Below are positions 17,712 to 38,155 of a stretch of DNA of 64,000 bases, piece after piece. Under the pieces are notes generated by a model, which was not told the origin of the DNA, did no database searches, and saw only the letters and a list, made by a program, of their open reading frames with translations. A program made the position numbers and the translations under genes. The stretch covers positions 62,001-126,000 of the forward strand of contig NC_135765.1 in assembly GCF_052425735.1 (NCBI RefSeq), given 5' to 3'. Positions within the stretch are counted from its first letter, which is position 1; every line of letters starts with the position of its first letter. The DNA comes from Oculina patagonica. Its lineage: Eukaryota.

Positions 17712-20700
17712 TCAGTTATAAAAATTCGCCCCTTCCCTACCCGTGAGAATGGCGTCAATCCATATACTCATCGCCAGACCACTGGGAGCTGCAACGTAGT
17801 ATGTTTCTTGTGGAGTCTTGACACAAAACGTAGTCCTGACAGAGGAACCTTTGTGCGAATTGGGCAAATCTACATACACGTCTTGTATGGCCTGGAAATA
17901 AATTATACCCTTGGGTACGCGTTGATGTTCGTCAGAGTAGTAGCACAGAGCACGTTTCTGTCTGTCCAAGACGAACCAGCGTTTTTTCCAGGACTTGATG
18001 AGCTTTCCTCCAAGTTTTGACAGGTACCCTTTACAAGCACTGGCTGTTACACGCACTGATGGACAGTTTTCTAACACGTGACCTGTAGAGACCAAGTGCT
18101 GGACAAGGTTGATGTCACCGTCGTGATGAGACGTGCCATTTTTGACCTGTTTTGTTAAATAGGGTACACAACATAAATAGATGATAGTCAAAGAAATGAA
18201 TGTCACTTTTTATGAGAAATTTAGAATGCTAGTGAATGGGTGTTAGGGGCACTGATTCTACGTGGTAACCATCTAAGCAGTACGATGTGCAAGACAAAAC
18301 TCTAACAGCTCCCAGGCCGCCCCTTCCAACCCGGTATTCCCGTTTATTCGCGCCGTTCCCAGTCTTCTCTCATCGCTCCCGGCCAGTTTGGAAAGGAGCG
18401 AAACTTGGCATGCGTTGCTCTGTGGTTGGAAATAAATTAAATAAAACGAAAGAAACCTTTCCCATTTAAACAGTATTGATTTCTTGGACCTCAAAGTGTT
18501 ATCATTGTCCTTACGGTTACGTAGAAGGAACACACCCCTCCCTGGTGAGGGGGGGAGGGGGGGGGGGGGAGTTGGTGAATAGTCTGTACAGCAACTTCAG
18601 TTGTTACCTTTGGAGGGAGTCGTTCTTGAATGGCCCTCTCTGTCATCATCTCTTTACGAGCTTTCTCTGCCGCTGCAACTTTTTCGAGCTCCTCTTGCTT
18701 TTGTTTTTCAGAGAGAACTCTTTCCATCTCCTGTCTCCTTAAACGTTCCTTTCCCAATGCTTGTTCGAGATCTTTGATTTTGTCACCATCTTCTGCGACA
18801 GCTGTACTATCTTTTTGTTGTTGCACTTCAGCTAACTGTCGCTCGAGCTCCAGTCTTCTCTCCCTTTCTCGCTTCAGCTTCCGCGCTGTTTGGTCTTTGG
18901 CTTTCTCGTCTCCACTACTCCCGCTTTCGCTGCTCTCTTGCTGTTTATGCCAAAGGTTCTCCGCTTCTTTCTTCAATTCTATCAATCGCCTTTTTTCTTC
19001 TTCTAAACGCTGTTTTCGCTCCTGAAGCGAGCATCCGTTTCCAAGTTGCGATATATCTCGCATGTTCAGCGCTGACAGAATCAATGGAGCATCTGAGCCA
19101 TTGCTTCTAATTTTCTTGTACTCTTTCTCAAGGTTGATCAAACGCGACTTCTCTTTTTGCATCTGTTCTCTTTGATTCTTGAGCTCCGCTTGAAGCCGCC
19201 GTCTTTCTTCCTCTGATTGTCGAAGCGTTTCCTGCTGTTGATCTTGTAAACACTGAACGCGCTTCTGCTCTAGTTCGAGTTTCCTTCTTTCTTCCTCTCT
19301 TTCTTTTTCGAATTGTTGTCGAATCACTTCACGCTCCCGTTCAAGCTGCTCGGCCGCTTCGCGTTGTTTCTGCTCTAACTCTTCGAGTAAGAGCTGCTCT
19401 GTTTCGAAAAACTCAAACTCGATTTGGCGTTCACGTTCCATCTTATCTTGTTTTGAAATCATGGCATCTTCGATTTCTTTCATGGCTTGAGAATGCTTCT
19501 CCTCGAGTTCCATCAGCCGTTTCTTTTCCGATTCGATCATCTCTTTTTCATGTTCCTGTTCCTTGGCTGCATTCTCCAGCATTTCTAATCGCTCCTGCTC
19601 TAGTTTGTTTAATCGCTCGCGTTCTTCTTGAACTCTCATCTTCTCTTCTTCTCGTTCTTGATCGAGTCGTTGTCTCTCCAGCTCAATCTGTTTCAGGGCT
19701 TCTTGTTGCTGTTTCTCCAAGAGCTGAATCCTTTTCTTTTCCTGTTCGATCTTAGAATTCTCTTTTTCCCTTTCCTCTTTTAACATCTTGATTTGAGCGT
19801 TCAGTTCCTCTTCCAGTTGATGTATGACCTCACTTTGTCTCTCTTTCATCTCCTCGAGTTTCTTTCTTTCTTCATCGATCAGTTCACTATCAAGTTGCTG
19901 CCGCTCATATGTGAGAAGCTCCTCTTCCAAACAACTTAACTCTTGAAGAGCTAGCTGTTGCCTCAACTCTTCGATGGCTACTCTTTCTTTCTCCGTTCCT
20001 TCTTCTCCCTCCAGCTTTGCTTTCATTGTCTTTAATCGTTCGTATTCTTCTTGTCGTCTCTTCTCCTTATTTGAGCGTTCAAGTTCTTGCTTTCTGACAT
20101 TATCTTCGTATTTTTCCTGAAGCATGATCAGTTTCTCTTTCTCTTCGTCAAAGTGCCTCAGTTCTTCTCGCTGTCTTTCCAGTTCTTTGATTTGAACTGC
20201 TATTTCTTCTTCAAAGCTGTCAACAGCTTCCTTGTGCTGCTGTTCCATTTCTTGAAGCTGAAGCCGTTCTTCTTCAAGTTGTGTTTTTTCAAGCTCAATT
20301 CGCTCTACAGCCTCCTTGTACTCATTTTCCAGAGACAACAGACGCTCGTTTTCCTTCTCAAGTCTTTCTCTTTCTTGCTTATCTTTCTTGTACTGGTCAA
20401 TGGCCAGCTCCACATCTAGTTTGAACAAATAAAAAAATATTAATAAAAAACGAAAAGAGGTGTTGTAAATACATGTACTACATGTATCATGATACGATCG
20501 ATTCCTAGTAATACGGAAATAAAATATTTTAATCCTCTTCACTAACTGTTTCATAATGGTAATAAGACAATGGTTGTTCAGCAAGACCATATCCTCAAGT
20601 TGCAATTACTTTCTCCCTACTAGATAATTCTATGTTACTCGTTACGACCTAACCCTTCATAAAGCCAGGTTAAAGGGGCACTGTCACGACAATTTATTAC

Positions 20701-20999
20701 TACTATTATTACTATTATTATAATTATAATAATATTATTATGTATTATGTCAAAGGACGCGGCTGTGACCCGGACGACCGATGCGGATGAAATAGTACGA
20801 ATATGAGTGCCGAACCCAGAGCAGGGTGGTGCGGGGTGCTGGCACTGCCAAAGGTGCCACCCCAGACTCTGGTGGGCGGGAGCGTCACCGAGTAGGCAAG
20901 CGTTGGTCCCCCCATGCCCTTTTTTTTTTTTTTTTATTTTTTTTTTTTATTATTATTATTGTTATTTCTAGTAAGTTGCTGTCGCGCGAGACCATGTCC

Positions 21000-21040
<41 letters not shown>

Positions 21041-24000
21041 TATGGGAAACTATACAGGATTCTGGGGTGTGCCCACTAATCAACAAAATTACCTTTGAAA
21101 ACAAGCGAAAGGCATACATTCATACTCCAAGATGTGAATAAACCATGATCAATGGTGTTTGAGTAATTTTCTTCCAAGTGTAACTGTCATACTAGAAAAC
21201 GTCGGCCCGAGTCTTTAAAGTTTTAGGCCATTTCTTTCATATCAGTCCGTAACCAAACCACAGTTAAACAATATTCATGACTAGTACAGTACGTTTTAGC
21301 AGGCTAGGCCACATTTAGTGGATTTCCAATAATACCAACACCTTAACTGGGTTTGCAATAATCACTTAATGTTTGTGACACTGCCACTTTACCTAAGCTA
21401 GAAATCAACAAAGAGTACAAAGGAACAAGAATGGGAATATTGGCAAGATTAGAGCAATCCAATAGATCATTGTTACTAAGCAGGGAAGTGTCGGCAAATA
21501 GCTCTTACTTACCAGGGTAGTATTGGTCAGGAACAATAGAAAACCGGTTGCCTGGATTGGATTCCTTGATCTTCTTAGCTTCTTTGGGATGATTAAACCG
21601 AAAGTAATTGGACTTTCCCAGACAAATCATACAACCTACAAAATACGATAACACCGTGACTAAATACGATATAGCGTGACACAGTAACACGATGGTTACG
21701 CGCCTTATTTATGTTTATATATCCACAGACACTGTAACATTCGAAAAGATCACGCAGCAGGCTAAAACGAACTAACTCTCCAAATAAAGAATACTAGTGG
21801 GACATGCAAGCCATCATTTTCGTGATAAAAAAAGTCATATCTATAAACCGTTTCTTATAACTAAAGTTCACTCTTTTTAATGGGGATGATGAGTTATCAT
21901 GTAAGTGAATGAAGCACTATAAGGACATAATCCAGATGCCTTGTTTAAACAGGAGTTCGATTTGAGGGTCATAGCGTGTATACTTCTAATACAAGTGCTG
22001 TACCATCGATAAGTGAGCAATACTAATACCTAAAATATTTGTTCATAAAAAAAAGTCATACCGCTTACTTCAATACAGTGAAACGAGACATAATAAATAT
22101 GCACCATTATGGAACGTTTCAAAATTACACTGAGGTACTGATACATGTACAGCTAAGGTTATGAGTTGTATTCATCAAGAAAAGGTTACACAACATTATG
22201 ACTTAGATCATTACAATAAAACGAACGGAGGCGTAAAGATGGAACATAATGAATTGTAAACACCTACAAAGTAGACGTTACAATGGCGACGAGAATAAGT
22301 GTCAAAAATGCGAAACTGAAAAATAATAATGTCAAACAACAAATCTGCCAGTCAGACTGTATTCCTGACATAAAACCTTAACTAGAAGAAGCAGAAACAT
22401 TAAATAACAGGTGTGGATTATATTTTTTAACGCTAATATATTAATCAAGTCAACATTCGTAATGAGGAAATGAATCACTTTACAGCCGTTAAGAACTTTC
22501 TAGAGATTGAAACTTATTTGAATGATATAGCAATATATGCAAAGATTAATTACGAGATACGTTCTTTTGGGTATAGGCTATATAAAAGGGCATATATATT
22601 TTGCATTTTTATACTATGTACTAATTTAAGAGATAAAAATCTCTTAATGAAAAAAAACTTGCAAAAAGGTGATTGTGTACCAAACTTATAACAAACATTA
22701 CAACCAGCCCTGAGTAGCGAAAATGAAGGGAAAATGTATATTCAAATTATGAACGCATTATTGCGATGTTGGTGTTTTTAATCACTGCGCAACACAGTAG
22801 GATTATAAAGTAGCCTCTTAAATACTGGAAAATACACACGTGTTAACCATATCAATCCTCACTGACACAGAGTAGGCGTTTTAGCGGGATATATTGAGGT
22901 CCGCGGGATCATTTCAAGCAGTTTGAAATCCTCCCGCGCGCCTAAATTTAGATAAATAAACTACCAAGGAATGAAAATTTTTTAAACGCTTTTAGAATAA
23001 TGATTAAACTGAAATATATATAATTTTAGAGTAAACTTACGAGCGAAGATTGAGCAAGAGATTAGACAAAGCTGTTTGCTAATGTGGAAATTCCTGTTTC
23101 CATTTTGTACATTACTGTCATCCAGTAACTAACACGAGAGTTCAAATAATATTTACGTTGTACAGCCTAGTGGCTTATCTAAACACAAGGCTAGCTCCTG
23201 TCAGGGGTAGGGAGAGCAGTACAGTGTTATTCTAGCGGTAGGGAAGACGCGATTGGTCGGATAACGGGTGAATAAACTAATACATGTCACGTGTTAATTA
23301 GAAATCGACTGTTCCATGAGACAGGAAGCTTCAGTTGACGAAGTAGCGGATCACAGGCTCGCGGGAAGATTCGAGGCACAGTAAGAACGGTCAAAGTAAA
23401 CATGCTGCTAAATGTTGCCTTAGTTGTGAATAATTAATACCTTGTGGTAATCTGGTTGGCTCTGAGATAGGAATACCATCCACAGAACACAATGCGGCTT
23501 TCGGATACATAACCACTGCATCGCCATTGTACTCCACTATACAGTGCTCACTGTGGACGAAACACATCTTAATGTTAATGGCTGTCACAAGTTTTCCTTA
23601 GGAGCTCGTCAGGACTCACGAAACTGGCAGATTCAGTTGTCGTTCGTATCCGTCTTATCTCGCAGTCGAAACCATCCTGGTATTCGCGTTTGATTACTCC
23701 TGTGTCCCACATTACACAACTATATGAGCCCCAAGGAAGAACAGAAAATGACTTAAAATATCGGACAACGCTCCTTTAATGTATAAAGTACAATAAGGAG
23801 AGAATAAAAGTTGCTATTGCTCCCACTTACGGTTCTATTCCTTTTCCTCTCAGTTGAATGTCGGGTTTGCATGTTTCTGTTGCAACACCGATCACTGTTT
23901 TTCCTTTCAAGAGAAATAAATTGAATAGAACAAATAAGAAAACAGCTCTAGTCAGGGGAATAGTTTTGTCAACTAACCACATACAATAACAATAACAAAT

Positions 24001-27000
24001 AATGGCTTCGAAAAGCAAATTTTCGACAGCAATAATAAAATTTTGAGGGCTAGTATCTCACTCTCCAGTAATACGTCAAGAATGTTAAAATTCTCTCGCA
24101 CATGTTACTCCTGGATAAAATTAATTTACGGCAATTCTGATATGGTACCTCTTTTAATTGGGCATAAAGTAACACCAATACTGAGCCTTCCTCCGCCAAG
24201 ACTCACAAAGTGAGGCTCGTCTGTTTCGAACTTTAGCGCTGAGCCCAGCTCGGTGACGGCAAGAGCGCGTTCCTAACAGAAGAGAAAAAAGAAAGTCCGA
24301 GATTAATCATAAAATAGCTACACCCTCTGGAGGGGATGCTATACCAACGCCAGCCGAACATGTGAGGTTATTCGTCCAAGCCCTCCCCACATTTATAAAC
24401 CACGGTCAACAGAGGCATTGCGAGAGCAAAGTGTCTTTCCACAAGCAATACCCAAGCAAAGCAGTTAGGACTCCAATCTCAAGTCCCCTGGGATATTAAA
24501 CCTCTCCTATATTGAAAATTCCTCACAGCAGATCACGGGATCAGTTCAAGTCGCAAGGAAATCAGAAAGAAGTTTTCAAACGAAGAACGAAGCTCTCTAG
24601 AGTGTCGTAAGTGTCGTTTAGTACCCCAGGGGAAAAAACCTAAGAGAAATCACTGTGGAGCGTTTGAAAGATTGACTGTCTATCGGCAACTCACCCGAGC
24701 TGTTTTATTTGTGCACATAAGTGGTCTACATCATATAAAAAAGATCTTAGGTACGGATACAAAGAAGAAGAAATCCAAAAATTGAAATAAAATGATCGCT
24801 GAAAACATTTTACCTCATCTGTGCCACCAGAAACTTTAAGCTCAAACTTCATTTTGATATCTGATAACCGTAACTTCAGTTTGACGCACAAAAAAGTTAT
24901 ATTTGAAAGCAATTTGGCATAAATGCACGAGGGTTAAGAGGAAAAAAATAATAAATACAGCTCAAGGAAATATAATTGATTTAATCTTGGGGAAACACGA
25001 GCAATCTGGGATAAACGAGCCCAAAGGAGCATTTCAAAAAATGCACCTGGCAATAAACTTGCGTGCAACGAGAAGAGAAAAAGAATTGTTTGTTCCGACC
25101 ACTTGCCAAACAAAGCAAAAGTTAATTTCCTTAAAGAAAAGTGGACGGTATTTTCGCTTTATGAAGCACTTCTGTCATTCAATCAGAGAGCGCTTTGAAT
25201 TTTTGCTGTCAAGTATATTCGCTAATATTACCGGCGGAGGGTTATTGTCGTGCTTATATTCTAATTGATAACAATTGACGTTTACTGTAACAGAGTCATG
25301 TTTGCAAGACACACAGGAAAGAACAAGCACGTTTTATTGTAAAAATCATAATCAACTACGTCAAACAATAACCGTTTGAAAACCAGAGCACGCGAATAGA
25401 GAATAAGGAAATTAAACCTGACGTACATTCAGTTCGTACGACCGATTACATTCAAAATACAACCTTATGTAAATAAGAAATTACAAATATTGAAATAAGA
25501 TTTTCGCTGTTGTTCTTTTCGCAGAAAAGTGTAAATATTTTCTTAAAGCTTTTTCACCATACATTATGTTGTAATACAAAACGACAAAACGCAAAACACT
25601 GCTTTATTATTTAGACTAATCGAGTACACGCGACTCGTGCTAATAACGTCATATTAATGAAATTCTAACAGATCATCCACGTCTTAAATTAAAAGCCTGC
25701 GAAGGAAAAAAGAGAGATCGATAATGAAAGAAATCGAAGGAAATGTACATGTCGTACATGTAGGTTATTGTCGGATTACAGCCTCTAATGGCCGGCACCA
25801 AATGTGCGATAGTCACAACTTGTTAACAAATAAAAAAGTAGGCATTGGCTTTGAACCAGATTAAGGAATTTTTCTGAGGATTCGGCAATGGTTTAACCAA
25901 GAAGCGACTCTGTGGATTAGCAACGTTTCTATCAGGGAGGCAAGGTCTTAATAAATGATCTCGCGAGAAAAGAGCTTTTCACGCATGATCCCACGAGGAA
26001 AGGAAAGTCCCGTGAGGAAAGAATGCATCCCGCGAGGAAAGTGTGATAATCCCGCGAAGAAGGTGTTTTACATGATGATCCCGCGATGAACGTGTTTTAC
26101 ATGATAGTCCCGCGAGGTGCACGGTAATTATTCGTCCTCAGTTGAGGGTAAACGCTTGTGTAAGGAGCAGGTGCAATGTTTGAGTCATCTTTCAATATCA
26201 AGTTTTGTACTTCTCCTTTAGAAGGTGTCAGCTTATTGTAGATTGTTTATTTGCCGGCAGATAGAAAAAGATCACAAGTATAATAATATGATAAGTCTTA
26301 TCTTTTAAGTAAGAAAGTAATTAAAATGTAAGCCATAAGCATCTTAAAGGAGAAAATTTTGACAAGCAAATTTATCCTAAACGACACCTTATCTGCCGTA
26401 GCAGTGATCTCAAACTAACTGAAAGTCTTACTCACATACGTGTTTGTACTTTTACGACCTTTCCACTGAAATATATCTTCAGTTTGTGACATTCGCTTTT
26501 AGTAGTATTCGTGGAAAAAATATTCGAATTTGAGCAGCACGTTTTTTGGTGTGTTTACTTTTGAAAAAAGCATTACGTGCAGTTGAAAGCAGTATTTTTC
26601 AGTTGTGTAGCTTAAGGTTATAAAGATAACATCTGCAATCAGTTATTAGCGAATAATTATCAGACAGAATTTCTTCTGTTTTTATAACTTAACGAAAAGA
26701 GAGAGCTTTCGGTTATACCCAAAGGACACAATAATATTTAAAACAAAAAGACAGTAAAAAAAAAACTGCTAACAAGACGGTTGGCAGACTATTTTTCTTA
26801 CGCTTTTCAATACAAAATACCAGCCACAAAATGCCATCAAGATGCATTAGCTGTTATGAAGTCAAAAAGCTACTTACCGCTAAAGGGCAAATTATGTCAG
26901 TCGGGGGGATTCGGAACATTTCGGGGTTATTTACGGACTGAGAAGTATATGATACTTATATCAAGCCTAAAGATAACGCGACCGTCAGGGTCTAAAAGTT

Positions 27001-30000
27001 TGGAAAGGATTGTGGACACAAAGCGAACATTAAAACCGAATCTACTTTTCTTCTATCTACTATTTTAAATGAGAAGTTCAAAATTCAAAACGCTCTTATT
27101 AAACGCCACATGATGGCGTCGAAAAGTCCAACCTTTCTTTGATGATCATTCCGAGTGAACTATAAATTATACGTCGAGGGTTGAACACCTTAGCTTATCA
27201 TGTCGTATGGCGATCAAAATTTATAAAAATGGGAACGTTTAATTATGCTGTAAACAACGAACACGATGGTATAAAAAGCAGGCAAGGTAAATATATATAT
27301 ATATATCAGTCTGAACAATCCCTTATAACAACTCGTTTAAGTACTTAGCGATATTCGATGTATTTAGTTTCAACCAAAAAATGCTTAACCTTAATTTGTA
27401 TACGAAAAGACTATCAACGTCAAAAGAAAAATAGATCAAAATTTCACCACAAGAGGAAAAGAGTAGAGAACGTCGTTAATTTCAAGTAAAACTCGCCGAC
27501 TAGTGCAATCGTTTTCAAATTAATCCTCGGTGGCTTAGAGTGCCAGTGTTCATAGCCTTAGGCGAAGTAGTAATATTTCCATCAATAAAAATTACATCTC
27601 CGCTTGGCAAAGAAAAATATATTTTGCTCTACTGGTTTGTTCAAAGGCAGAGCACGATGTCAGGGTCTTGGCCATTTTGTGAGACTTGCTAACCTATAGC
27701 TAGTTACGTAATTCCTTAATTTTACAATCAGCCTCACCACATTAAAAACCTCAAGGCACAGTTTCCATCTGCTGGTCAATTATATTCCTCTTTTGCTTTA
27801 TTAAACAGTTTAGTTTTCAAACCGTTTAAACCACCAAGCCACCAAGCTGAATGTTAGCACAGAGTCGGTAATTTAGAAAATGGATAAATCATTAACAGAA
27901 AACACCGCTGCGACAAGATTTCAAATAAAACGGCGGCCACTTTACCTCGATGAGTTTTTGAGTCTTGCTCCATTTATCTTCCCAGATTCCCGTCAGTCGC
28001 TTCATCAGCTCTTCATTTTCTTGGAGTTTTTTCTCCGCTTTATCAACTCCTAGTGAACTAGGAACATGGCCACTCTGCAACACAAGAAGAAGAAATATAC
28101 CTTCACTTTTACAACGCGAGGAATATAATCGTTTAGGGAGCGAGAATTCCAATTTCCTACTTGACGAAAAAAGAAAAAAAAACTGTATTTGAAGACTGTA
28201 CCTGTTGAAATACTGCATTGGCTAAAATGCGAACAAATCTCATTGTCCAGAGCGAAATTTGGCCAGAGATATCGATTACACTCCCTTTAAAATTCAAAGG
28301 CGGTAAACGCTGTGGATCGGTAGCTTAAAAGGATGTGCAAGCCTTGCTAACGCCTAGTTATTTGAATTACGCCGTCAAGATGAGGTTATGACATAATGGA
28401 TAATATAACAAAATTAGTCATGTGACCATGGCCAACTCCGATTCTGATTATCGCTGACAAGCACCTCAAAGAACCGACAATAAGAATAGAAAACAAAACA
28501 CACAAATCGTAATAGTCCCTGACAGGGGCAAACGCGACACGCAAAATATTGTTTAGGTTATGTCGAGTAGAGTTTAAGTAGAAGCGGCATTGAGGCTAAT
28601 GATAAACAAAATAAATTCGTGCGAGCAGGTCAAAACAAACTTCAATACAACATTAAAATCCGTTTACGGCGAATAAAACAAAACCAGAGCTAGATATTGG
28701 GGTAGGCACGAAATTTCCAATACTTCCTGCTCAAAGTCCACAAATTTGCTTATAAACTGCGAAGAGTCAACATGGACGACAATCTCTGTAGTAATTACTT
28801 TACCTTACTTTACTTTTCTTTCGAAGCGCACACACAAACTCGTTGAACCTTGCCCCCTATACTGCCGCTTTTCATCGATAATTTTGCTCAAACTTCGAAA
28901 TTTTTACCTTCTTCTTAAAACACTCGCAAAAATCCGAGGAAATGTCGCCGCGTTTTTCCTGCTTTTTGTTTTGAAGAAATTATAGAAAATAAGGCGCCGA
29001 CCACCTGCTTCACTTTAGCAGCTGGCGACGGAAATTTCCTCCCCGAACATAACACTTGAAATCAATCGTGTCAGCTCAAAGTTCGACAACAAAACCTTCA
29101 CCAACAGATAAGGTTAAAAGAAACATTGTGAGACACACAGTTTGAAAATGCGGTCAAACCCCAATTGGTCACAGCGTTGTTGTACGCCTCCACATTTTTC
29201 AAGAATAATTCTTTCTTTCCATTGTCTGACTGTGAACGAAACAGTTTCTTTGCATGTGGTTGAATCAAATGCGAATAAAAGATCGGCGCCAATTTGATTC
29301 ACAGTTAGCTATTGTTTCTAAATTATCAACTAGAATCTTTGGAAGTTTTCTTCTTTTCGACCCCAAGGTAAATTCTCGACAGGAAGCGAATTCAATCAGT
29401 TACTCAAGGCCAATTTGTAAGTGTGTATGTTCTCGCGTAACGACCTCATGTACATTAGCATGTTGGATCCTCAAACCATTTAATACATTTTGTGATATCG
29501 CAAGTTTTGTGATACAACTGTTAGAAAGCATTAATTCTGTATGATTATATACTTGAGAGACGTCTTATACGAAAATGGAGTTTCTATACTGTACCAAAAT
29601 GACACTTCACACGGACAAAATAAATTTTGTATACAGACATACATGTAAACGTAAAAATCGAACGTAACTTATTACCATAAAAAGGTAACGAAACGCAACT
29701 TCATTAAAAATGTTTTCCAATAGAAGATTGTTTTGTTCTGTTCAGACAAAGCTTACCTTAACAAAGCAATGGAAGTATTCTGTTTGGTTTAAATTATAAT
29801 TTTGAATCAGACGCAGAAACAAATTCAGAACCAAGACTAAATGCACATGCTGCGATAACAATTCAGTTACGAATAAAAATACATACAAAGAACACATACC
29901 TTTAACCTTTCCTTAAGACTGTGTATTTCCAACTGGAGCTCTTTAATCAGTTTGACATTAGAATCCTGAAAATGCAAAGATCAAGATTGTAGAGAAAGGT

Positions 30001-33000
30001 TAACGATTGAGAGATTACTTCAAGTTGTACCAAACGAAATATACGGGCAAGTTTTCCCATAACATAACTCAATAGTTGGTAATCTGTTACATATGGACTG
30101 ACCTTTAAAGAAAATCATTCTCAGTCTATGTAAAAGTTAGACGCGGTAGAAAGCGAAAAAAAAATTAAGAAAATACTAATTTGAAAGTGATAAATGATCA
30201 TCNNNNNNNNNNNNNNNNNNNNNNNNNNNNNNNNNNNNNNNNNNNNNNNNNNNNNNNNNNNNNNNNNNNNNNNNNNNNNNNNNNNNNNNNNNNNNNNNNN
30301 NNNNNNNNNNNNNNNNNNNNNNNNNNNNNNNNNNNNNNNNNNNNNTTTTTTCCCTAAGAAAAATACAGATGGTCGAAAGTGGTGGAGGCAAGGTAGATGG
30401 CAGATGACTGATTTATTTTGGGGACAATCATTCTAGGTCTATTTGAACTGAAACGTGTTCTGCCATGTCCTCTTTGTAAATTTTGTAGCCAAGGTGTTTC
30501 TTTTTTTTTTCATTCAGAAATTTGGAGTTGGTAATTGACAAAAAAAATGGACAAGAAAGGTTGCTTTTTTTATTTTTTGTGACCAACATACCCTAAAGGT
30601 TGTGTGACCAACATACCCTAAAGGTTGTGTGACCAACTTACTCTAAAGGTTGTGTGACCAACATACCCTAAAGGTTGTGTGACCAACTTACTCTAAAGGT
30701 TGTGTGACCAACATACTCTAAAGGTTGTGTGACCAACATACTCTAAAGGTTGTGTGACCAACATACCCTTTTTGAATACTTTAAAGGTTGTTGGCCTAAA
30801 GGTTGTGTGACCAAGATGCACTTGGAAAGGTTGCATCACCAAACACCTTATGAATTTGTTTCTCAGTTTTGAAAATTAGTGAAATAAATCTTATGTATAT
30901 TGCCTCAATATAATTTTAAGTTGTAACATGTCCATTGTATTTTAAACACATCTTCACCCGTAATACCAAGTGAACTCAGCTGTAACATGTGTTATGGCCG
31001 TTAATGACAGCCCTAAAAATAATTAACAAGAAATAAATTTTATTTAACAGATTCACTAGGTGGCTTTTGTGGAGTCAATATTTAATCAGAAGCCGAGGAC
31101 AGCTTATTGAGAGGATGTGAATAAATTAAAAGTGAGGTCACTTTTCAGGGAGTTCCGGGATTGAATGCTAATGAGATGCACACCATTTATGATGGGCATC
31201 ATGAAGTGTCCTCATTGATAAAAGTTCACCAAAACATAAATAACCCCATCAAATATGAAGTAATATAAAAATTGCCAATAACCAAATAGTACTTATTAAA
31301 CATTTCAAATGTACAAGCATAAATCCTGGACATACAGGGTGTAAGTCCCCCCCCCCCTCCCTTGTGTGCACCTTTTCAATCCTGGACATAAGTGCCCCCA
31401 CCCCTCCCTTGTGTGCACCATTTCTTACCTCATTTACTTTGGGAACATTCACAATGTTCTTGGCGTGATTTGCAAACCTCAAGGTGTTTAGCGTCTCATT
31501 ATGGCATGATGCAGAGGGTGATACAGCTGCTAACATTATAGTATGACAATTTCCACCAAAACAGTCCTTCAATATCCATGTCAGTGCCTACAACAGGAGA
31601 ATAGTCAACAAATTAGCACCTTTATAGGAAACACTTGGACTAAAATGTACAGACAGTAATGTCACTGAAGGAAATGTTTGCATTTTAAAAAAAAAAAATC
31701 AATGACAATGCTCAGACCATCCTCAAAAACCCAAGGGGCAGCTAGTTGGGAAGACAGAATTTTTGAGCAAAAGTTTACAGGTAACTTAAATTTTACAAGT
31801 AAACCCTCGCCTGAAAAAAATTCCATTGTCCTGACTAGCTGTCCCTGGGTCTCTGAGGATGTGCTTTTTACTTACAGAATCCTTGTATGGGACAGCAGCA
31901 GTGGGACCTGACTCCAAGTCTTGGCTTGCTAATGTTGACATGACTCTCTCCAATGTCATTAGTGATTTGTCAACATCAGCAGCAGTAGAACAATTGTCAG
32001 TACACTGGAAAAGACAAGACAAAACAACATTAGAGTCAAAAACAGCCATGCCATGACTCATCTGACCTTGTTATTACGTTGAGTAGTGTAACATACTACA
32101 TTGACTGGCAGTTCTTCTCTTTTTGATATCAGTGGAAAACTTTGTTTCATTTTTACCTCATCATGTATGCTCTTGCTTCCTGCCAAATCCACAAGTTGAA
32201 TCATGCTAACCATTTCACAGGGTAAGTCATCTTCAAGACGAGCCTACATTGTTAAAGAAGTATTTATTTAGTATGGCTGATCTATTATTAAAATCCAGAA
32301 TCAATACTTTGAGACATATTTCAGCAAAAAGTGTGGATAAAGAAATCAAAAACTGGTTTAATCAAGGAACCACTGTGATTTTAAAGTGCACTTGTAACTA
32401 AGAAACCGCAAATAATAATAATAAGAAAAGAAATCATTCACATGACAAATACAACAAATACAAAAGGTAAAGAGAAAATGTTACTCAGAAGAACTATTGT
32501 AGTCAGTACATGGTGTGGTTCAGTTTTACCCTTGGTAACATTTAATTTGGCAGTTTCCTTTGCTCTGATGTACATCGTACATACATGTATGATACAAAAT
32601 TATATGATTCTAATGCATTTATTAAAACAAACTTTAGAGAAGATGTGTAGCAAGTAGAACGAGAGGGACGGGGCCCACCCCCAGGAAATTATTGGGAGGA
32701 AAAACCAGGGGGGAAAAAACAAAGAAAAAAAGAAAAAAAAGTTTTTTTTTTTTATATCCGAGCGAAATAAAAAAAAGAGATGCCAGATCATACCAAGGGT
32801 AAAATTAAACCGCAACTTACATACATGTACAAGTAGTAATTGTAATCCTTTTATTTATTAAAATTCATTTGTTTCCATTTAATTATAAGCAAAGGTAAAT
32901 CATAACTGAAAATTCTGAGATTTAATGCAATATACAAGCTACAAAAATGGCCTTCCTCTTCCTACTGATGGTGCATAAAAATAATACTTAATACCCCAAG

Positions 33001-33175
33001 TAAATTTAATAATTATATTTTTCAACTAATTCCTATATTATACGATATTTTAATTACCTGGGTAAACCTTATTGTAAATATTGTATGCGAGCTACTCGAA
33101 AAGGAATTGGAAGCCCTGGAACATATTGACCTGCAAAGAAACGATACATGTTAATCTATAAATACAGGTATTAAG

Positions 33176-33211
<36 letters not shown>

Positions 33212-36200
33212 CAATCAATTAATCAGTCGACTGATAAAGTATTATTTTTAAATAAATACATGTTCACGTCTGATAACTAGTATAAAATTTAATGTTAATA
33301 TGTGTAGGTCATGTATAATATATTACACATGAACACAAAGCTTAATATCTTAATATTTATTATACAAATGTAGGTCAATATTTTTCAGTGTAATTTACAA
33401 TAATATATGCTGCATAATTTGAACACAGCTAGCTCACCTGTTTTTCTTTCCCTTTTCAATTAATCCCAATACTTCATTAACGTCTGTTACAATATGTTTG
33501 GTCAACTTGTCAACATACACACCAAGTTCACGGTGTTCACGAACTACAAAGAAGTTAAGGTGATAAAATTAACACTACTGAAAATAGCAGAAGGAATATA
33601 ATTTCAATAATACATTTATGTACATGCCCATGACCTTTCATTTATCTAACCTTGTGTGCATGATACAGCACGATGTTGTGGTTTAAATTTATCTTTGGTT
33701 TGAATTCTTGCTTGTTTCAGATTATGAGTAATGATTTAATAAAAAATATATATAATTATGGTGAAAAAAACATAATACAGCACAAATATTTTATAATTTC
33801 ATAATTTCATAGTGCTTTGTACACACTACAGTGTAATACTGTCTCATACTTTGGCTGTATAGTCCAATGATGTAATAGTAAAATAATAACTAAATTTGAG
33901 TTCCAGTCTGTAATGAACCCCAGCTGGGCTTGATAGAAGCGCAGACATTTCAACAATGCTCGATCAGTATATATTACATACTTCTCAATGAGTCTTGCCA
34001 GTTTCTTCTTCTTCCCAGCAGATCCTTCACAAACTCTTTGTGTATTTCAAGGAAACTAAAAATAAAAGTATTAATGTTATTAACAACCACAACTTACAGT
34101 AGAGCAAAATGAGCAAGCAGTAGTAACATGTGGGAAAATGTACATAAAAAATAAGGGAGTCATTGCTTTCAGGTTTCTATTGGTTGAAAATAACAAAACA
34201 AAAACAAAACAACAGCAATTTGTACACTGTACATGTAGGGGTTCTGATAGTGTGAGGCGCAGTGGCCTAATGGTAAGTGCACTGGACTCCGGATCGAGCG
34301 TCCGATTCAAGCCCTGGCCGGGGTCGACGTAATTGTGTTGTACGTGTTCTTACTTGTGGTTACTAAATGGGTACCACCAAAATTAAATTAATGCTGGGGG
34401 GTAACCTTGCAATGGACTTTCATCCCATCCACAGGGGGGAGGGATATTCCACATGGCCTCATGCTCCACAGGGGGGAGGGATATTCCACATGGCCTCATG
34501 CTCCACAGGGGGGAGGGATATTCCACATGGCCTCATGCTCCACAGGGGGAGGGATACTCCACATGGCCTCATGCTCCACAGGGGGGAGGGATACTCCACA
34601 TGGCCTCATGCTCCACAGGGGGGAGGGATACTCCACAGGGGGGAGGGATACTCCACATGGCCTCATGCTCCACAGGGGGGAGGGATACTCCACATGGCCT
34701 CATGCTCCACAGGGGGGAGGGATATTCCACATGGCCTCATGCTCCACAGGGGGGAGGGATATTCCACATGGCCTCATGCTCCACAGGGGGGAGGGATACT
34801 CCACATGGCCTCATGCTCCACAGGGGGGAGGGATACTCCACATGGCCTCATGCTCCACAGGGGGGAGGGATACTCCACATGGCCTCATGCTCCACAGGGG
34901 GGAGGGATACTCCACATGGCCTCATGCTCCACAGGGGGGAGGGATACTCCACATGGCCTCATGCTCCACAGGGGGGAGGGATACTCCACATGGCCTCATG
35001 CTCCACAGGGGGGAGGGATATTCCACATGGCCTCATGCTCCACAGGGGGGAGGGATACTCCACATGGCCTCATGCGCCACAGGGGGGAGGGATACTCCAC
35101 ATGGCCTCATGCTCCACAGGGGGGAGGGATACTCCACAGGGGGGAGGGATACTCCACATGGCCTCATGCGCCACAGGGGGGAGGGATACTCCACATGGCC
35201 TCATGCTCCACAGGGGGGAGGGATACTCCACAGGGGGGAGGGATACTCCACATGGCCTCATGCTCCACAGGGGGGAGGGATACTCCACAGGGGGGAGGGA
35301 TACTCCACATGGCCTCATGCTCCACAGGGGGGAGGGATATTCCACATGGCCTCATGCTCCACAGGGGGGAGGGATACTCCACATGGCCTCATGCTCCACA
35401 GGGGGGAGGGATACTCCACATGGCCTCATGCTCCACAGGGGGGAGGGATATTCCACATGGCCTCATGCTCCACAGGGGGGAGGGATACTCCACATGGCCT
35501 CATGCTCCACAGGGGGGAGGGATACTCCACATGGCCTCATGCTCCACAGGGGGGAGGGATATTCCACATGGCCTCATGCTCCACAGGGGGGAGGGATACT
35601 CCACATGGCCTCATGCTCCACAGGGGGGAGGGATATTCCACATGGCCTCATGCTCCACAGGGGGGAGGGATACTCCACATGGCCTCATGCTCCACAGGGG
35701 GGAGGGATACTCCACATGGCCTCATGCTACTGAAACTGGGATAACTGGTGGGCCACCAGGATCAAATGCAGACTTAACCTTTAACCTTTACATGGAGACA
35801 TTCTGATTGGTAAGTCAGAACATGTTGATTTGCTCATGCGTGTTTTTTTCAGCCAATTATAGATCTCAGTGACTTGCTGAAAACTATTTCAGTCAATCAG
35901 AATCCATGCTGTCAATTAACTTAGTTATTTACCTTATTTCAGCTCTGAATGATGTGTCATCTTCACAGGCAGAAGCTTTTTTGAAAAGACTCTTGCAAAT
36001 CCAAGGAGTAAGGCCTTCAGTTCCATCTGTTCCATACATAATGTGACTTTTACCACTGGCACATGCTCCATAGCTGAACACGCAAGTATTATAACCACCA
36101 AAACATGACGAAAGCACAAACTGACCAACATCTTCTAAAATCTAAAGAGAAAACAATGTACATGAAAGCATATTTTAAATATTATTTTTAGTTACAGTGT

Positions 36201-38155
36201 CCACATAATAAGATTTTGGCTTTTTCCTATAGCTGCACTCTTTGTAAATTCCTTTACCAGTAACTTCCCAGGCATAACTAGATCCATTTTCTTAAGTTAC
36301 AATTCACTGAAAGAAAAACCTAATAAGCACCTCCCCCCCCTCCCCCACCACCACCACCACCACTATCACCACCTCAATTTAGTGCCATCATTTGAATAAG
36401 TGCCCCCTCTTTTGGTTGAAATTTTAATTAAGCATCCGGGCAGTTATTCAAGGAAATACGGTACTCATTGAATAATACTGGGATATAAATATCTTTTTTC
36501 ACAGAAATCCAAATTTTCGCTATATTAAGTACGGCAGGGGTATTTTGCAGAATGCAAAATGATGCCTTAACCAACAAATAACAGCTAACCACTGACCACC
36601 GTTCTGCATTCTGCAAAATACCCCTGTATGCCGAAGGGGTTAAGTATGCATGAAAATTAAAAAAGAAAATTAAGGTAGTGAATCTTGCTGACGAATGATG
36701 CAAGGCAAACTCTCAGCACACAAACCAGTAAAAATGTTAGACTGCAGCTGCAAAGCACAATATTTTCAACTGTACATTACATTATGGATACCATATAATT
36801 AACTCAATACAATCCTGTATCTCCGTTGTCCACTGAAATCTGTCTTTGTCTAAGTGGTAAAGCCTTTTCTTTTTTTTAAATTAAGTAAGCTTAAACATAT
36901 GTGACTTTTAACAAGTTTTACAGTTCTTGACAGAAATTGAACAAGACAATTGACACAATGAAAAGCTGTCACAACAACTCACTAACAAATCCAAGTTTCA
37001 ATATCTATGCAAATTCTTACACACTTGAAAGGTCAGGAGTATAGTTCACATTTTATTGTTAAAGAAAATCGCTGATCGATATTAACTAATACGGCTGTAT
37101 TTTGCTACAAAAAGGCAGATCACATAAACGTGACTGAATGCATTTATAATTTTCCCCGCACACGAAAATTATATCGTGAGTCCTCCACACAAAGGTGAAA
37201 ATCGACCCCCTTGTGCTAATATTATTTTTTTTTCTCTTCGACATAATGAAGTTTCAAAAACTCGCTCCACGCCGCTCAGTGGAACAGGAAAAACAAAAAA
37301 CAACGTGAAACATCCGCCTAAACACATCTTCCATTCGTTTGCAAATCTGTCATATCCGGTCCACACCTTTTGCTAAATCGACTACGAAACGAACAACTTT
37401 AAATGAAAAATACGAATGAAACAGTTAAATACTTGTTTGAAAACTCAACAAGAAATTCACCAAATTATCTTGTAGCTTTCAGCTTCGGATAAGCTAAGTA
37501 GATGCGATAAGATCACTTTATGGCCGTTCGGTTCAATCTGTCCTAAGAGTAAATAAGCTAAATTAGACGACTAAATTTATTTATAGATCAGACCACAATG
37601 AACACATTGGAAATTATAGAAAGAAACTTGCTCTTTCCTTTTATCGTGATATAAAGTTATTGTATTGTTTGAAATGAAAAGAACGCGACATCCAATATTT
37701 TAAAGCTTAAAAAATTAAGTTTAATCTTACCTGCACCTTCGTCTCCGGTTCGGCGGTTTCGTTCGGCTTGCTGCAGAACTGTAAGCAAGATTACGACAGA
37801 ATACAATTAGTCGATAAAATTACCAATCTGCTAAATGACTCGAAACGCTCGAAATTTCTCTCATTCAAAAGAAAAGATTTCTGTTGGAAACGAATACAGT
37901 AGCTTTCCCAGCAAGCGATCAATACACAAGATGAACACTCAATATCGAAGACAAGCTCAACTGTCGCAAGGAAAGAGAGCGTGTTGAACTTACTGTGTGA
38001 TCAAATGTAAACACTTTTTCTTTCCCAGTTTCTGGATTAAGCACTCGAACTTCATCGCCTTGTGTCCAAACTACACATTCCTCGCCATTTTCCCGTTCTC
38101 TGTCGTTCAAGGGTCTCACTGAGACGGCAACCCTTACACTCGATTTAGACGCCAT
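17712..38155 (-). CDS. Kinesin-3 (KIF16-like) degenerate motor + FHA + long coiled coil + PHLDB/LL5-type PH domain; ~17 exons
   Basis: Approximate exons 37994-38155, 37731-37778, 35933-36141, 33983-34056, 33438-33543, 33058-33130, 32157-32243, 31877-32005, 31429-31587, 29900-29965, 27946-28074, 24148-24272, 23830-23903, 23441-23551, 21512-21634, 18608-20415, 17712-18146 read in one frame. Motifs: VAVSVRP, GACASGKS, LVDLAGS, VPYKDS, ETLNTLRFA, EHC..FRFNHP (FHA), KSWKKRWFV..GIIYFQAI (PH). Confidence 0.88.
20920..21041. repeat. Poly-T and (TTA)n microsatellites
   Basis: Directly visible. Confidence 0.9.
25958..26118. repeat. Degenerate ~20-bp tandem repeat, core ATCCCGCGAGGAAAG (~7 copies)
   Basis: Directly visible inside the large kinesin intron. 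Confidence 0.7.
30578..30815. repeat. 25-bp minisatellite TGTGACCAACATACCCTAAAGGTTG (~8 copies plus degenerate tail)
   Basis: Head-to-tail copies with no spacers. Confidence 0.92.
31717..31861. mobile_element. Short palindromic MITE in a kinesin intron
   Basis: CATCCTCA..ACCCA.GGG.CAGCTAGT and its reverse complement at the two ends. Confidence 0.65.
34252..35790 (+). mobile_element. tRNA-derived SINE containing an internal minisatellite expansion
   Basis: Head with A-box TGGCCTAATGG and degenerate B-box at ~34262-34315; the body resumes after the array at ~35728; tail ACTTAACCTTTAACCTTTA. Confidence 0.65.
34428..35728. repeat. 37-bp G-rich minisatellite CCACAGGGGGGAGGGATAYTCCACATGGCCTCATGCT (~35 units, some 20-bp short units)
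   Basis: Directly visible, near-identical units. Confidence 0.97.

What the first reader, a model, noticed from the sequence alone, without database searches (positions are those of the whole stretch)
17712..38155. Kinesin-3 motor fused to a full PHLDB/LL5 architecture
Seen: motor, neck, FHA, coiled-coil and PH exons are phase-continuous. The pre-FHA segment LAVTELGSALKFETDEPHFVSLGGGRLSIGVTL and the PH region HLVSTGH..CKGYLSKLGG..KSWKKRWFV..GIIYFQAI..WIDAILTG closely follow PHLDB1/2 as I recall them, while the motor (LPCEMVSMIQLVDLAGS) is KIF16B/STARD9-like. Known: PHLDB proteins lack a motor, and KIF16B ends in a PX domain. Inference: a possible intermediate showing that PHLDB cortical microtubule-capture proteins arose from kinesin-3 by motor loss, or a lineage-specific fusion.
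Basis: partly seen in the sequence, partly recalled or inferred. Interest (0 to 1): 0.72.

Follow-up and report, generated by a model that had tools for sequence, protein, structure and literature searches.

The report
Coral LL5/PHLDB gene with kinesin head
This coral gene joins a kinesin-3 motor head, whose catalytic residues have decayed, to the FHA, coiled-coil and PH tail of the cell-cortex scaffold LL5/PHLDB. All sampled cnidarian classes have it, which suggests that the headless PHLDB proteins of bilaterian animals are kinesins that lost their motor.

Summary
Window 17712-38155 (minus strand) is the coding span of one 17-exon gene with GT-AG at every intron. My model gives 1302 aa and is 100% identical to RefSeq XP_078380781.1, an uncharacterized protein of Oculina patagonica.

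Pfam finds Kinesin at 13-339, FHA at 466-521 and PH at 1196-1291. RNA-like contigs from three runs splice neck to CC1 to pre-FHA. They also join the last motor exon straight to the neck exon, so the N gap at 30203-30345 lies inside an intron.

- **Distribution:** the same architecture is annotated in stony corals, octocorals, jellyfish and hydrozoans, under the names "KIF16B" or "PHLDB1".
- **Trees:** the FHA groups with bilaterian PHLDB (98/97), with KIF16B as sister. The motor groups with KIF16B/STARD9 (97/98).
- **PH domain:** it is PHLDB-type, not KIF1-type. It is the only such PH domain in this genome.
- **Motor:** it has lost the switch I arginine and the switch II glutamate in cnidarians generally.
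- **Headless isoform:** an unannotated alternative first exon (about 28446-28202) probably produces one.

Motor loss in bilaterians is the most economical reading but is not proven. The scan also noted the decayed motor of this gene separately on this same window (s1-286895), not on other DNA.

The parts
37994..38155 (-). Exon 1: start codon at 38155, motor residues 1-54 (N-terminal strands of the motor, VAVSVRP).
   Evidence: Donor is GTAAGT. Identical to P0296.
37737..37778 (-). Exon 2: 42-nt mini-exon, residues 55-68. A second donor 6 nt downstream would add 2 aa, which matches RefSeq isoform X1 (1304 aa).
   Evidence: Found by comparison with P0291 and P0296.
35933..36141 (-). Exon 3: residues 69-138. 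The P-loop reads GACASGKS, where canonical kinesins have GQTGSGKS/T.
   Evidence: Pfam Kinesin 6.5e-14 on this exon alone. Motif table.
33982..34055 (-). Exon 4: motor residues 138-163.
33438..33543 (-). Exon 5: motor residues 163-198 (REHRELGVYV...).
33058..33130 (-). Exon 6: residues 198-222. Switch I reads SSSSH instead of SSRSH, so the arginine is lost.
32157..32243 (-). Exon 7: residues 223-251. Switch II reads DLAGSK instead of DLAGSE, so the glutamate is lost.
31876..32004 (-). Exon 8: residues 252-294. Loop 11 is degenerate, loop 12 has no lysine-rich K-loop, and helix alpha4 begins here.
   Evidence: The AlphaFold model has low confidence at 247-261 and 282-285.
31429..31587 (-). Exon 9: residues 295-347. 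It holds the conserved alpha4-alpha6 region and ends with the start of the neck linker (PKVNE).
   Evidence: Pfam Kinesin 1e-13..
30203..30345 (.). Assembly gap (N). It lies inside intron 9 and is not coding.
   Evidence: RNA contigs join exon 9 directly to exon 10 (loose ends at 29967). The model is identical to RefSeq with nothing missing.
29900..29965 (-). Exon 10: kinesin-3 neck linker and neck coil, residues 348-369 (DSNVKLIKELQ...).
   Evidence: Joint 28074|29900 in X1, X2 and X5. Colinear with KIF16B.
28202..28446 (-). Probable alternative first exon, not in RefSeq. Its ATG at 28243 encodes 14 aa (MRFVRILANAVFQQ) in frame with exon 11. The product would be a headless LL5-like isoform.
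   Evidence: Joint 28074|28202 with GT..AG in X2 (depth 10.7, against 8.4 for the neck joint). A contig in X5 covers 28202-28446. Sequence and frame. An in-frame stop upstream argues against a cassette exon.
27946..28074 (-). Exon 11: CC1 segment, residues 370-412, with the motif RLTGIWEDKWSKTQK that is conserved across Cnidaria.
   Evidence: Joints on both sides. HMM of this region against KIF16B gives 1e-21. Weak Pfam Kinesin_assoc hit.
24149..24272 (-). Exon 12: pre-FHA and start of FHA, residues 413-454. It has no in-frame ATG, so it cannot begin a protein.
23831..23903 (-). Exon 13: FHA core, residues 454-478.
   Evidence: The loose end at 24148 in X1, X2 and X5 reads into this exon..
23441..23550 (-). 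Exon 14: FHA, residues 478-515.
21513..21635 (-). Exon 15: end of FHA, residues 515-556 (NYFRFNHP motif).
18608..20415 (-). Exon 16: 1808-nt coiled-coil exon, residues 556-1158.
   Evidence: The donor at 18608 is confirmed by identity to P0296.
17712..18146 (-). Exon 17: PHLDB-type PH domain, residues 1159-1302, and the stop codon.
   Evidence: Pfam PH 8.4e-18. Best database matches are PHLDB1.

Best explanation
**What is shown.** One gene (Oculina patagonica LOC144663646) encodes a 1302-aa protein. In order it has a kinesin-3 motor of KIF16 type, a neck, CC1, an FHA domain, about 600 aa of coiled coil, and a C-terminal PH domain of LL5/PHLDB type. It is the cnidarian counterpart of bilaterian PHLDB, it is the only gene with a PHLDB-type PH domain in this genome, and it occurs in all four cnidarian classes sampled.

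**What I infer about origin.** A KIF16-type kinesin-3 duplicated before cnidarians and bilaterians split. One copy gained the PH tail. Cnidarians kept the head, and the bilaterian line lost it. The likely route was an internal promoter just upstream of the CC1 exon, which already produces a headless isoform in cnidarians.

**What I infer about function (less certain).** The coiled coil dimerises the protein. The PH domain ties it to membrane rich in 3-phosphoinositides. The head keeps a kinesin fold, helix alpha4 and the neck linker, but it has lost the switch I arginine and the switch II glutamate. It would therefore bind microtubules with little or no ATP turnover. The protein would then be a direct cortex-to-microtubule tether. 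In bilaterians LL5 does this job indirectly, through CLASP.
For: - **Gene model and identity:** (1302/1302 identical to XP_078380781.1).
- **Domains:**
- **Spliced RNA:** joints 24271|27945 and 28074|29900 in three runs, against continuous unspliced cover in the DNA-like run X17.
- **Orthologs with Kinesin+FHA+PH:** Pocillopora, Porites, Acropora, Dendronephthya, Paramuricea, Rhopilema, Sanderia, Clytia, Hydra and Hydractinia.
- **PH domain:** top full-length hits are PHLDB1 of Ptychodera, Penaeus and lamprey at 50-55% identity. The nearest solved PH domains are 3-phosphoinositide binders such as DAPP1, centaurin-alpha1 and cytohesins.
- **FHA score ladder:** cnidarian orthologs 200-337 bits, PHLDB 113-170, KIF16B 98-105, KIF14 about 48, KIF1A/B about 53.
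- **FHA tree:** cnidarian proteins plus PHLDB form a clade at 98/97, with KIF16B as sister.
- **Motor tree:** one cnidarian clade at 100/100, sitting with KIF16B and STARD9 at 97/98. The AU test rejects a recent origin from cnidarian KIF16B (p=0.017).
- **Neck-CC1-preFHA:** colinear with KIF16B, 1e-21.
- **CC1 remnant in PHLDB:** two bilaterian PHLDBs (P0029, P0077) keep it at their N-terminus, i-Evalue 2e-5.
- **No second copy:** no other PHLDB-type PH domain in the genome.
- **Headless isoforms:** alternative joint 28074|28202, Clytia RefSeq isoform X2 starting at the CC1 exon, and a 905-aa Acropora cervicornis model.
- **Motor decay:** the motifs are degenerate in all 14 cnidarian sequences, while alpha4 and the neck linker are kept. 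The motor is the least conserved globular domain.
- **Fold:** confident kinesin-3 fold, pLDDT 85.9, TM 0.87 to KIF13B.
Against: - No outgroup (sponge, placozoan, ctenophore) was found or could be searched properly, so the direction of change rests on parsimony.
- The cnidarian motors are long branches. The AU test does not reject placing them with KIF14 (p=0.078).
- KIF1, true KIF13 and KIF28 were not in the trees.
- The coiled coil has no significant similarity to PHLDB coiled coils after composition correction.
- The headless isoform rests on two short, low-depth contigs and on automated models in other species.
- Walker A (GxxxxGK[ST]) is mostly kept. Octocoral copies keep SRRSH and DLAGTD, so some nucleotide binding or turnover is possible.
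- No biochemical or localisation data exist.
Confidence: 0.72

Rival explanations
1. Fusion in the cnidarian stem. A headless PHLDB-like gene already existed, and the cnidarian ancestor placed the motor-neck-CC1 module of a KIF16-like kinesin in front of it. The head would then be secondary, and bilaterian PHLDB never lost one at that stage.
For: Every headed form found is cnidarian or comes from unlabelled marine samples. No outgroup is available. The motor is a long branch whose subfamily placement is not fully robust. A published analysis placed the origin of PHLDB2 in Bilateria (PMC9145010).
Against: The PHLDB FHA is itself of kinesin-3 type and closest to KIF16B. Some bilaterian PHLDBs still carry a CC1 remnant upstream of the FHA. 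A kinesin ancestry with motor loss is therefore needed anyway, and this rival adds a re-fusion at exactly the homologous position. The AU test rejects derivation of the head from cnidarian KIF16B (p=0.017). The neck-CC1-FHA region shows no seam.
Confidence: 0.15
2. Working transport motor. The head still hydrolyses ATP and walks, carrying PIP3-rich membrane through the PH domain. This would parallel KIF1A with its PH domain or KIF16B with its PX domain.
For: Walker A GxxxxGK[ST] is kept in most orthologs. The neck linker and neck coil are well conserved. Octocoral copies keep near-canonical P-loop, SRRSH and DLAGTD. The fold is intact.
Against: The switch I arginine and switch II glutamate are absent in scleractinians. 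Switch II glycine is lost in medusozoans. Loop 11 is unrecognisable in all, and there is no K-loop. The head evolves far faster than the KIF16B head: 36-37% identity between coral and hydrozoan, against 69% between coral and insect for KIF16B. RefSeq lists isoforms that truncate the head in Acropora and Pocillopora.
Confidence: 0.1
3. Two neighbouring genes, a kinesin remnant and a PHLDB gene, wrongly merged by read-through or by assembly.
For: The contigs are assembled, not single molecules. A likely internal start exists at 28.2-28.4 kb.
Against: In-frame GT-AG joints link neck, CC1 and pre-FHA in three runs at depths up to 298. The pre-FHA exon has no start codon. Independent models in more than ten species have the same architecture and the same junctions.
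Confidence: 0.02

Closest known systems
PHLDB1/PHLDB2 (LL5alpha/LL5beta), bilaterian cortical microtubule-capture scaffolds
   Same: The C-terminal PH domain is 50-55% identical, including the flanking HLVSTGH...C.GYL segment and the C-terminal ending. The FHA region scores 113-170 bits and forms one clade with PHLDB. The overall order is FHA, long coiled coil, PH. It is the only such gene in the genome.
   Different: It carries a 347-aa kinesin head, a neck and a full CC1 in front of the FHA. Homology of the coiled-coil sequence could not be shown. CLASP, ELKS and liprin binding sites are not recognisable and were not tested.
KIF16B / Klp98A (kinesin-3 with a C-terminal PX domain)
   Same: It is the closest canonical kinesin for the motor (41-43% identity over motor to FHA; clade support 97/98). 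The neck, CC1 and pre-FHA are colinear (1e-21), and the FHA scores 98-105 bits. RefSeq names several orthologs KIF16B.
   Different: There is no PX domain; a PH domain stands in its place. True KIF16B with PX exists separately in corals (P0309, P0311, P0312). The catalytic motifs that are intact in KIF16B are degenerate here.
KIF1A/UNC-104 (kinesin-3 with a C-terminal PH domain)
   Same: The architecture is motor, FHA and a C-terminal PH domain. The FHA matches KIF1A/B structures at 1e-13, and the motor matches KIF1A at 3e-76.
   Different: The PH domain is not KIF1-type. No KIF1 PH appears among the matches. One search found no KIF1-specific tail domains. The K-loop is missing.
Catalytically degenerate kinesins such as KIF26A/B (from my own knowledge, not tested here)
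   Same: A kinesin fold is kept while the ATPase motifs have decayed, and the presumed role is static microtubule binding.
   Different: They belong to a different family (kinesin-11) and have a different tail. I made no direct comparison.

Membership tests
Kinesin-3 | N-terminal kinesin motor domain with a kinesin fold | tested here: met
   Pfam PF00225 2.9e-79 at residues 13-339. AlphaFold pLDDT 85.9; the Foldseek top hits are KIF13B, KIF1A and KIF14, TM up to 0.87.
Kinesin-3 | Falls inside the kinesin-3 clade in a motor tree | tested here: met
   The kinesin-3 group separates from the KIF15/KIN-12 outgroup at 100/99, and the protein sits with KIF16B and STARD9 at 97/98. PDB scores for kinesin-3 are 1e-72 to 1e-79, against 1e-56 or worse for other families. 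Caveats: KIF1 and KIF13 were poorly sampled, and the AU test does not reject a KIF14 placement.
Kinesin-3 | Neck linker and neck coil followed by CC1 and an FHA domain | tested here: met
   The segment VNEDSNVKLIKEL, then CC1, then FHA is colinear with KIF16B at 1e-21. The FHA matches KIF1A/B and KIF13B structures.
Kinesin-3 | Lysine-rich K-loop in loop 12 | tested here: not met
   Loop 12 contains no lysines in the coral copies. The coral KIF16B loop is also lysine-poor, so this feature is not universal within the family.
Kinesin-3 (as an active motor) | Intact catalytic motifs: P-loop GQTGSGK[ST], switch I SSRSH, switch II DLAGSE | tested here: not met
   The window has GACASGKS, SSSSH and DLAGSK. 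All 14 cnidarian orthologs are degenerate at switch I and/or switch II.
KIF16B | C-terminal PX domain (PF00787) | tested here: not met
   Pfam finds no PX and finds a PH domain instead. Separate PX-bearing KIF16B genes exist in corals.
PHLDB/LL5 | C-terminal PH domain of PHLDB type | tested here: met
   The best long hits among 1.8 billion representatives are PHLDB1 proteins, E 1e-38 to 1e-36, 50-55% identity, always at the C-terminus.
PHLDB/LL5 | FHA domain of PHLDB type | tested here: met
   Scores of 113-170 bits to PHLDB FHAs, above any kinesin. The clade with PHLDB has 98/97 support.
PHLDB/LL5 | Homologous central coiled coil | tested here: inconclusive
   A coiled coil of about 600 aa is present. 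After composition correction the only hit is one weak match at E=0.008.
PHLDB/LL5 | Protein starts at or just before the FHA, with no motor | tested here: not met
   The main isoform carries a 347-aa motor. A headless isoform from the alternative exon at 28446-28202 is probable but rests on short contigs.
PHLDB/LL5 | Binds PI(3,4,5)P3 and recruits CLASP and ELKS to the cortex | not testable with these tools
   The basic motif K..(6-11)..KKRWF in strands beta1-beta2 is conserved, as read directly from the sequence. The nearest solved PH domains are 3-phosphoinositide binders. No binding data exist.
KIF1-type PH tail | PH domain groups with KIF1A/UNC-104 PH domains | tested here: not met
   No KIF1 protein appears among the best 150 matches or among 36 solved PH matches.

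The most novel reading that the evidence does not exclude
LL5/PHLDB scaffolds are decapitated KIF16-type kinesin-3 proteins. Cnidarians still carry the headed ancestor, with a head that has been catalytically decayed since before the cnidarian classes split. One gene makes both a headed and a headless form from two promoters. In the bilaterian stem the headless form became the only one, and microtubule capture passed to partners such as CLASP.
Probability: 0.6. Interest if true: 0.68.

Novelty: new variant of a known kind. Interest (0 to 1): 0.56.

Why it matters
LL5/PHLDB proteins anchor microtubule ends at the cell cortex in bilaterians, and their origin has been placed in Bilateria (PMC9145010). 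That paper saw that the closest coral homolog grouped with KIF16B and left it there. The domain-by-domain evidence here shows instead that this cnidarian protein is the PHLDB counterpart and still carries a kinesin head.

This gives a concrete and testable account of how a motor became a scaffold. The catalytic residues decayed, an internal promoter arose, and then the head was lost. It also points to a simpler ancestral way of tethering microtubules to membrane.

There is a practical point too. The same gene is named KIF16B in some cnidarian annotations and PHLDB1 in others, which misleads ortholog tables.

Tried and rejected
- **PH exon against 50%-identity representatives:** no full-length cnidarian protein appeared, which wrongly suggested the gene was unannotated. 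The coiled-coil exon search and then the search with P0291 found the orthologs.
- **Octopus PHLDB1 FHA as query:** it returned only bilaterian PHLDBs in the best 120, so it said nothing about cnidarians.
- **ESM Atlas:** it gave only PHLDB1 for the PH domain and KIF16B/STARD9 for the whole protein. No cluster showed the combined architecture.
- **My first model:** it had an off-by-one error at donors and lacked the 42-nt exon. Both were corrected.
- **Coiled coil against PHLDB coiled coils:** no significant similarity.
- **CC1 HMM against about 287 PHLDB-like proteins:** only two carried the remnant, so it is not a general PHLDB feature.
- **Bacterial-type promoter scan upstream of the alternative exon:** not meaningful for an animal gene, so I disregarded it.
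- **Prd1 paper:** unrelated; it concerns a PLEKHM2-like protein.
- **Organism of P0029:** not resolved. The only information is assembly GCA_040938485.1 and a nearest named relative in hemichordates.
- **Not attempted:** no complex prediction, and no dN/dS because no ortholog coding DNA was available.

Full report
**What is there.** The minus strand of 17712-38155 carries open exon-sized frames with kinesin, FHA-like, coiled-coil and PH peptides. Pfam recognises kinesin motor pieces and a PH domain even on single exons. I picked splice sites by frame and by consensus and added two small exons that I had missed at first (23903-23831; 37778-37737). The result is a 17-exon model with GT-AG at every intron. 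It encodes 1302 aa and matches P0296 = XP_078380781.1, "uncharacterized protein LOC144663646 isoform X2" of Oculina patagonica, at every residue. The window is therefore Oculina, or something indistinguishable from it at this locus, and the gene model is already public. Pfam on the whole protein gives Kinesin at 13-339 (2.9e-79), FHA at 466-521 (2.1e-5, above cut-off) and PH at 1196-1291 (9.8e-17).

**Gap and transcript continuity.** I laid four runs on 24100-29990. Run X17 covers the stretch continuously with no joints, so it behaves as DNA. Runs X1, X2 and X5 cover the exons deeply and the introns hardly at all. They carry the joints 24271|27945 and 28074|29900, both with GT..AG on the minus strand. 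One X1 contig of 5373 nt holds the pre-FHA, CC1 and neck exons in a row, with 3832 nt on the 3' side and 1219 nt on the 5' side. Beyond 29967 all three runs continue with letters that encode NIVNVPKVN, which is the end of exon 9. Exon 9 is therefore spliced directly to exon 10 across the N gap at 30203-30345. The gap lies inside an intron and hides no coding sequence. I did not try to fill it. From the contig lengths I infer a 5'UTR of about 180 nt and a 3'UTR of about 1.3 kb.

**A second start.** In X2 the CC1 exon is joined not only to the neck exon (depth 8.4) but also to 28202-28296 (depth 10.7), again with GT..AG. X5 has a contig covering 28202-28446. This segment ends in an ATG at 28243 followed by 14 codons in frame with the CC1 exon. 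It has a stop upstream in that frame, and no joint enters it from upstream. I read it as an alternative first exon that gives a headless protein of CC1, FHA, coiled coil and PH. Two automated models from other species fit this reading. Clytia isoform X2 (P0465) has a different N-terminus and joins the common sequence at the start of the CC1 exon. An Acropora cervicornis model of 905 aa starts at the pre-FHA exon. The support is modest: short contigs, low depth, and pipeline-generated models.

**Relatives.** The PH exon searched against 1.8 billion representatives finds proteins of 1100-1600 aa with the PH domain at their C-terminus, at 50-55% identity. The ones that carry names are PHLDB1 of a hemichordate, a shrimp and a lamprey. 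None of the best 150 has a motor, and their FHA sits at the N-terminus. Searching with the coiled-coil exon and then with the Desmophyllum ortholog brought out the cnidarian set:
- Kinesin+FHA+PH proteins of 1230-1500 aa occur in Pocillopora, Porites, Acropora, Dendronephthya, Paramuricea, Rhopilema, Sanderia, Clytia, Hydra and Hydractinia.
- Automated annotation names them either "KIF16B" or "PHLDB1".
- True KIF16B with a PX domain exists separately in Porites, Desmophyllum and Actinia, at 41-43% identity to this protein.
- In the window's own genome the PHLDB-type PH domain occurs once.

**Domain histories.**
- *Motor tree.* The cnidarian proteins form one clade (100/100) whose internal order follows cnidarian classification. 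This clade sits with KIF16B and a STARD9-like protein (97/98), inside kinesin-3 (100/99 against KIF15/KIN-12).
- *AU tests.* Forcing the cnidarian heads together with cnidarian KIF16B is rejected (p=0.017). Forcing them with KIF14 is not rejected (p=0.078).
- *FHA scores.* The FHA region scores 200-337 bits to cnidarian orthologs, 113-170 to bilaterian PHLDB, 98-105 to KIF16B and about 48 to KIF14. It scores about 53 to the KIF1A/B structures.
- *FHA tree.* Cnidarian proteins plus PHLDB form a clade (98/97). Cnidarians (100/99) and bilaterians (83/83) are each monophyletic within it, and KIF16B is the sister.
- *Neck-CC1-preFHA.* A profile of this segment matches KIF16B end to end (1e-21).
- *CC1 remnant.* Two bilaterian PHLDBs, whose nearest named relatives are hemichordate, still begin with a recognisable remnant, "...WED..K.TQK.I..." (i-Evalue 2e-5).
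- *PH domain.* Its nearest solved relatives are 3-phosphoinositide binders, and no KIF1 PH appears.
- *Coiled coil.* It has no demonstrable similarity to PHLDB coiled coils.

**Reading of the history.** Head and FHA both point to a KIF16-type ancestor, and the segment between them shows no seam. The FHA and the PH domain are shared with PHLDB, and some PHLDBs keep a piece of CC1. The simplest account is that PHLDB descends from a KIF16-type kinesin-3 and lost the head in the bilaterian line, while cnidarians kept it. A fusion in the cnidarian stem needs an earlier head loss plus a re-attachment at the same place, so I give it about 15%. I had no outgroup, and the heads are long branches, so the direction of change is an inference.

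**How it probably works.** The head folds confidently as a kinesin-3 motor with its neck: pLDDT 85.9, TM 0.87 to KIF13B. Confidence is low only in loops 11 and 12. The catalytic motifs, however, are decayed:
- The P-loop reads GACASGKS.
- Switch I reads SSSSH, so the arginine is lost.
- Switch II reads DLAGSK, so the glutamate is lost.
- Loop 11 is unrecognisable, and there is no K-loop.
- Every cnidarian ortholog is degenerate at switch I and/or switch II. Medusozoans also lose the switch II glycine. Octocorals are the closest to canonical.

Helix alpha4, alpha6 and the neck linker are well kept. The head is the least conserved globular domain (81% identity to Pocillopora, 36-37% to hydrozoans), the FHA is the most conserved (97% and 60%), and the PH domain lies between. 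KIF16B heads change far more slowly. I therefore favour a dimeric tether. The PH domain would sit on 3-phosphoinositide membrane, and the head would hold a microtubule with little or no ATP turnover. The headless isoform would act like bilaterian LL5. None of this was measured. A working motor remains possible, at about 10%.

**What is known.** I found no paper that describes a kinesin-PHLDB protein or derives PHLDB from kinesin-3. One study of cortical microtubule complexes states that PHLDB2 "has origins in Bilateria" and that the closest Stylophora homolog is closer to KIF16B (PMC9145010). That is this gene, seen through a whole-length tree. The gene models are public, but the architecture and what it implies appear not to have been described. 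The scan's separate note on this window about the decayed motor (s1-286895) agrees with what I found.

**Verdict.** This is a new variant of known kinds, kinesin-3 and PHLDB. It is of moderate interest to people who study the evolution of the cytoskeleton.

Noticed in passing
window 34428-35728: A 1.3-kb G+C-rich minisatellite with a 37-bp unit and about 35 copies sits in the intron between exons 3 and 4. It produces long spurious ORFs on both strands (up to 479 aa).
   Followed up: partly
window 30578-30769: A 25-bp tandem repeat with 7.7 copies at 95% match lies about 230 bp from the assembly gap, inside the same intron. It may be the reason the assembly broke there.
   Followed up: no
window 37731-37737: A second donor 6 nt downstream of exon 2 (GTGCAG|GTAAGA) would add two residues. 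This matches the 1304-aa RefSeq isoform X1.
   Followed up: partly
window 24649-26180 and 26864-27097: Short RNA-like contigs at depth 3-5 lie inside the 3.7-kb intron in runs X1 and X5. They are probably unspliced precursor RNA, but another transcript is not excluded.
   Followed up: no
P0436, P0438, P0481, P0484 (Pocillopora and Acropora RefSeq isoforms): Several annotated isoforms start inside the motor, either after the P-loop or at the REH..GVYV exon. They would produce truncated heads, which fits a head that is dispensable for catalysis.
   Followed up: partly
public annotations: The same orthologous gene is named KIF16B in Pocillopora, Clytia, Hydra isoform X2 and Acropora muricata. It is named PHLDB1 in Acropora millepora, Rhopilema, Hydractinia and Hydra isoform X1. 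In Desmophyllum it is split into two gene models, OS493_035325 and OS493_035326.
   Followed up: yes
window 24100-29990, run X17: The DNA-like run differs from the window at roughly 3% of intron positions and has several small indels. It is a related species or a divergent haplotype, not the assembled individual.
   Followed up: no
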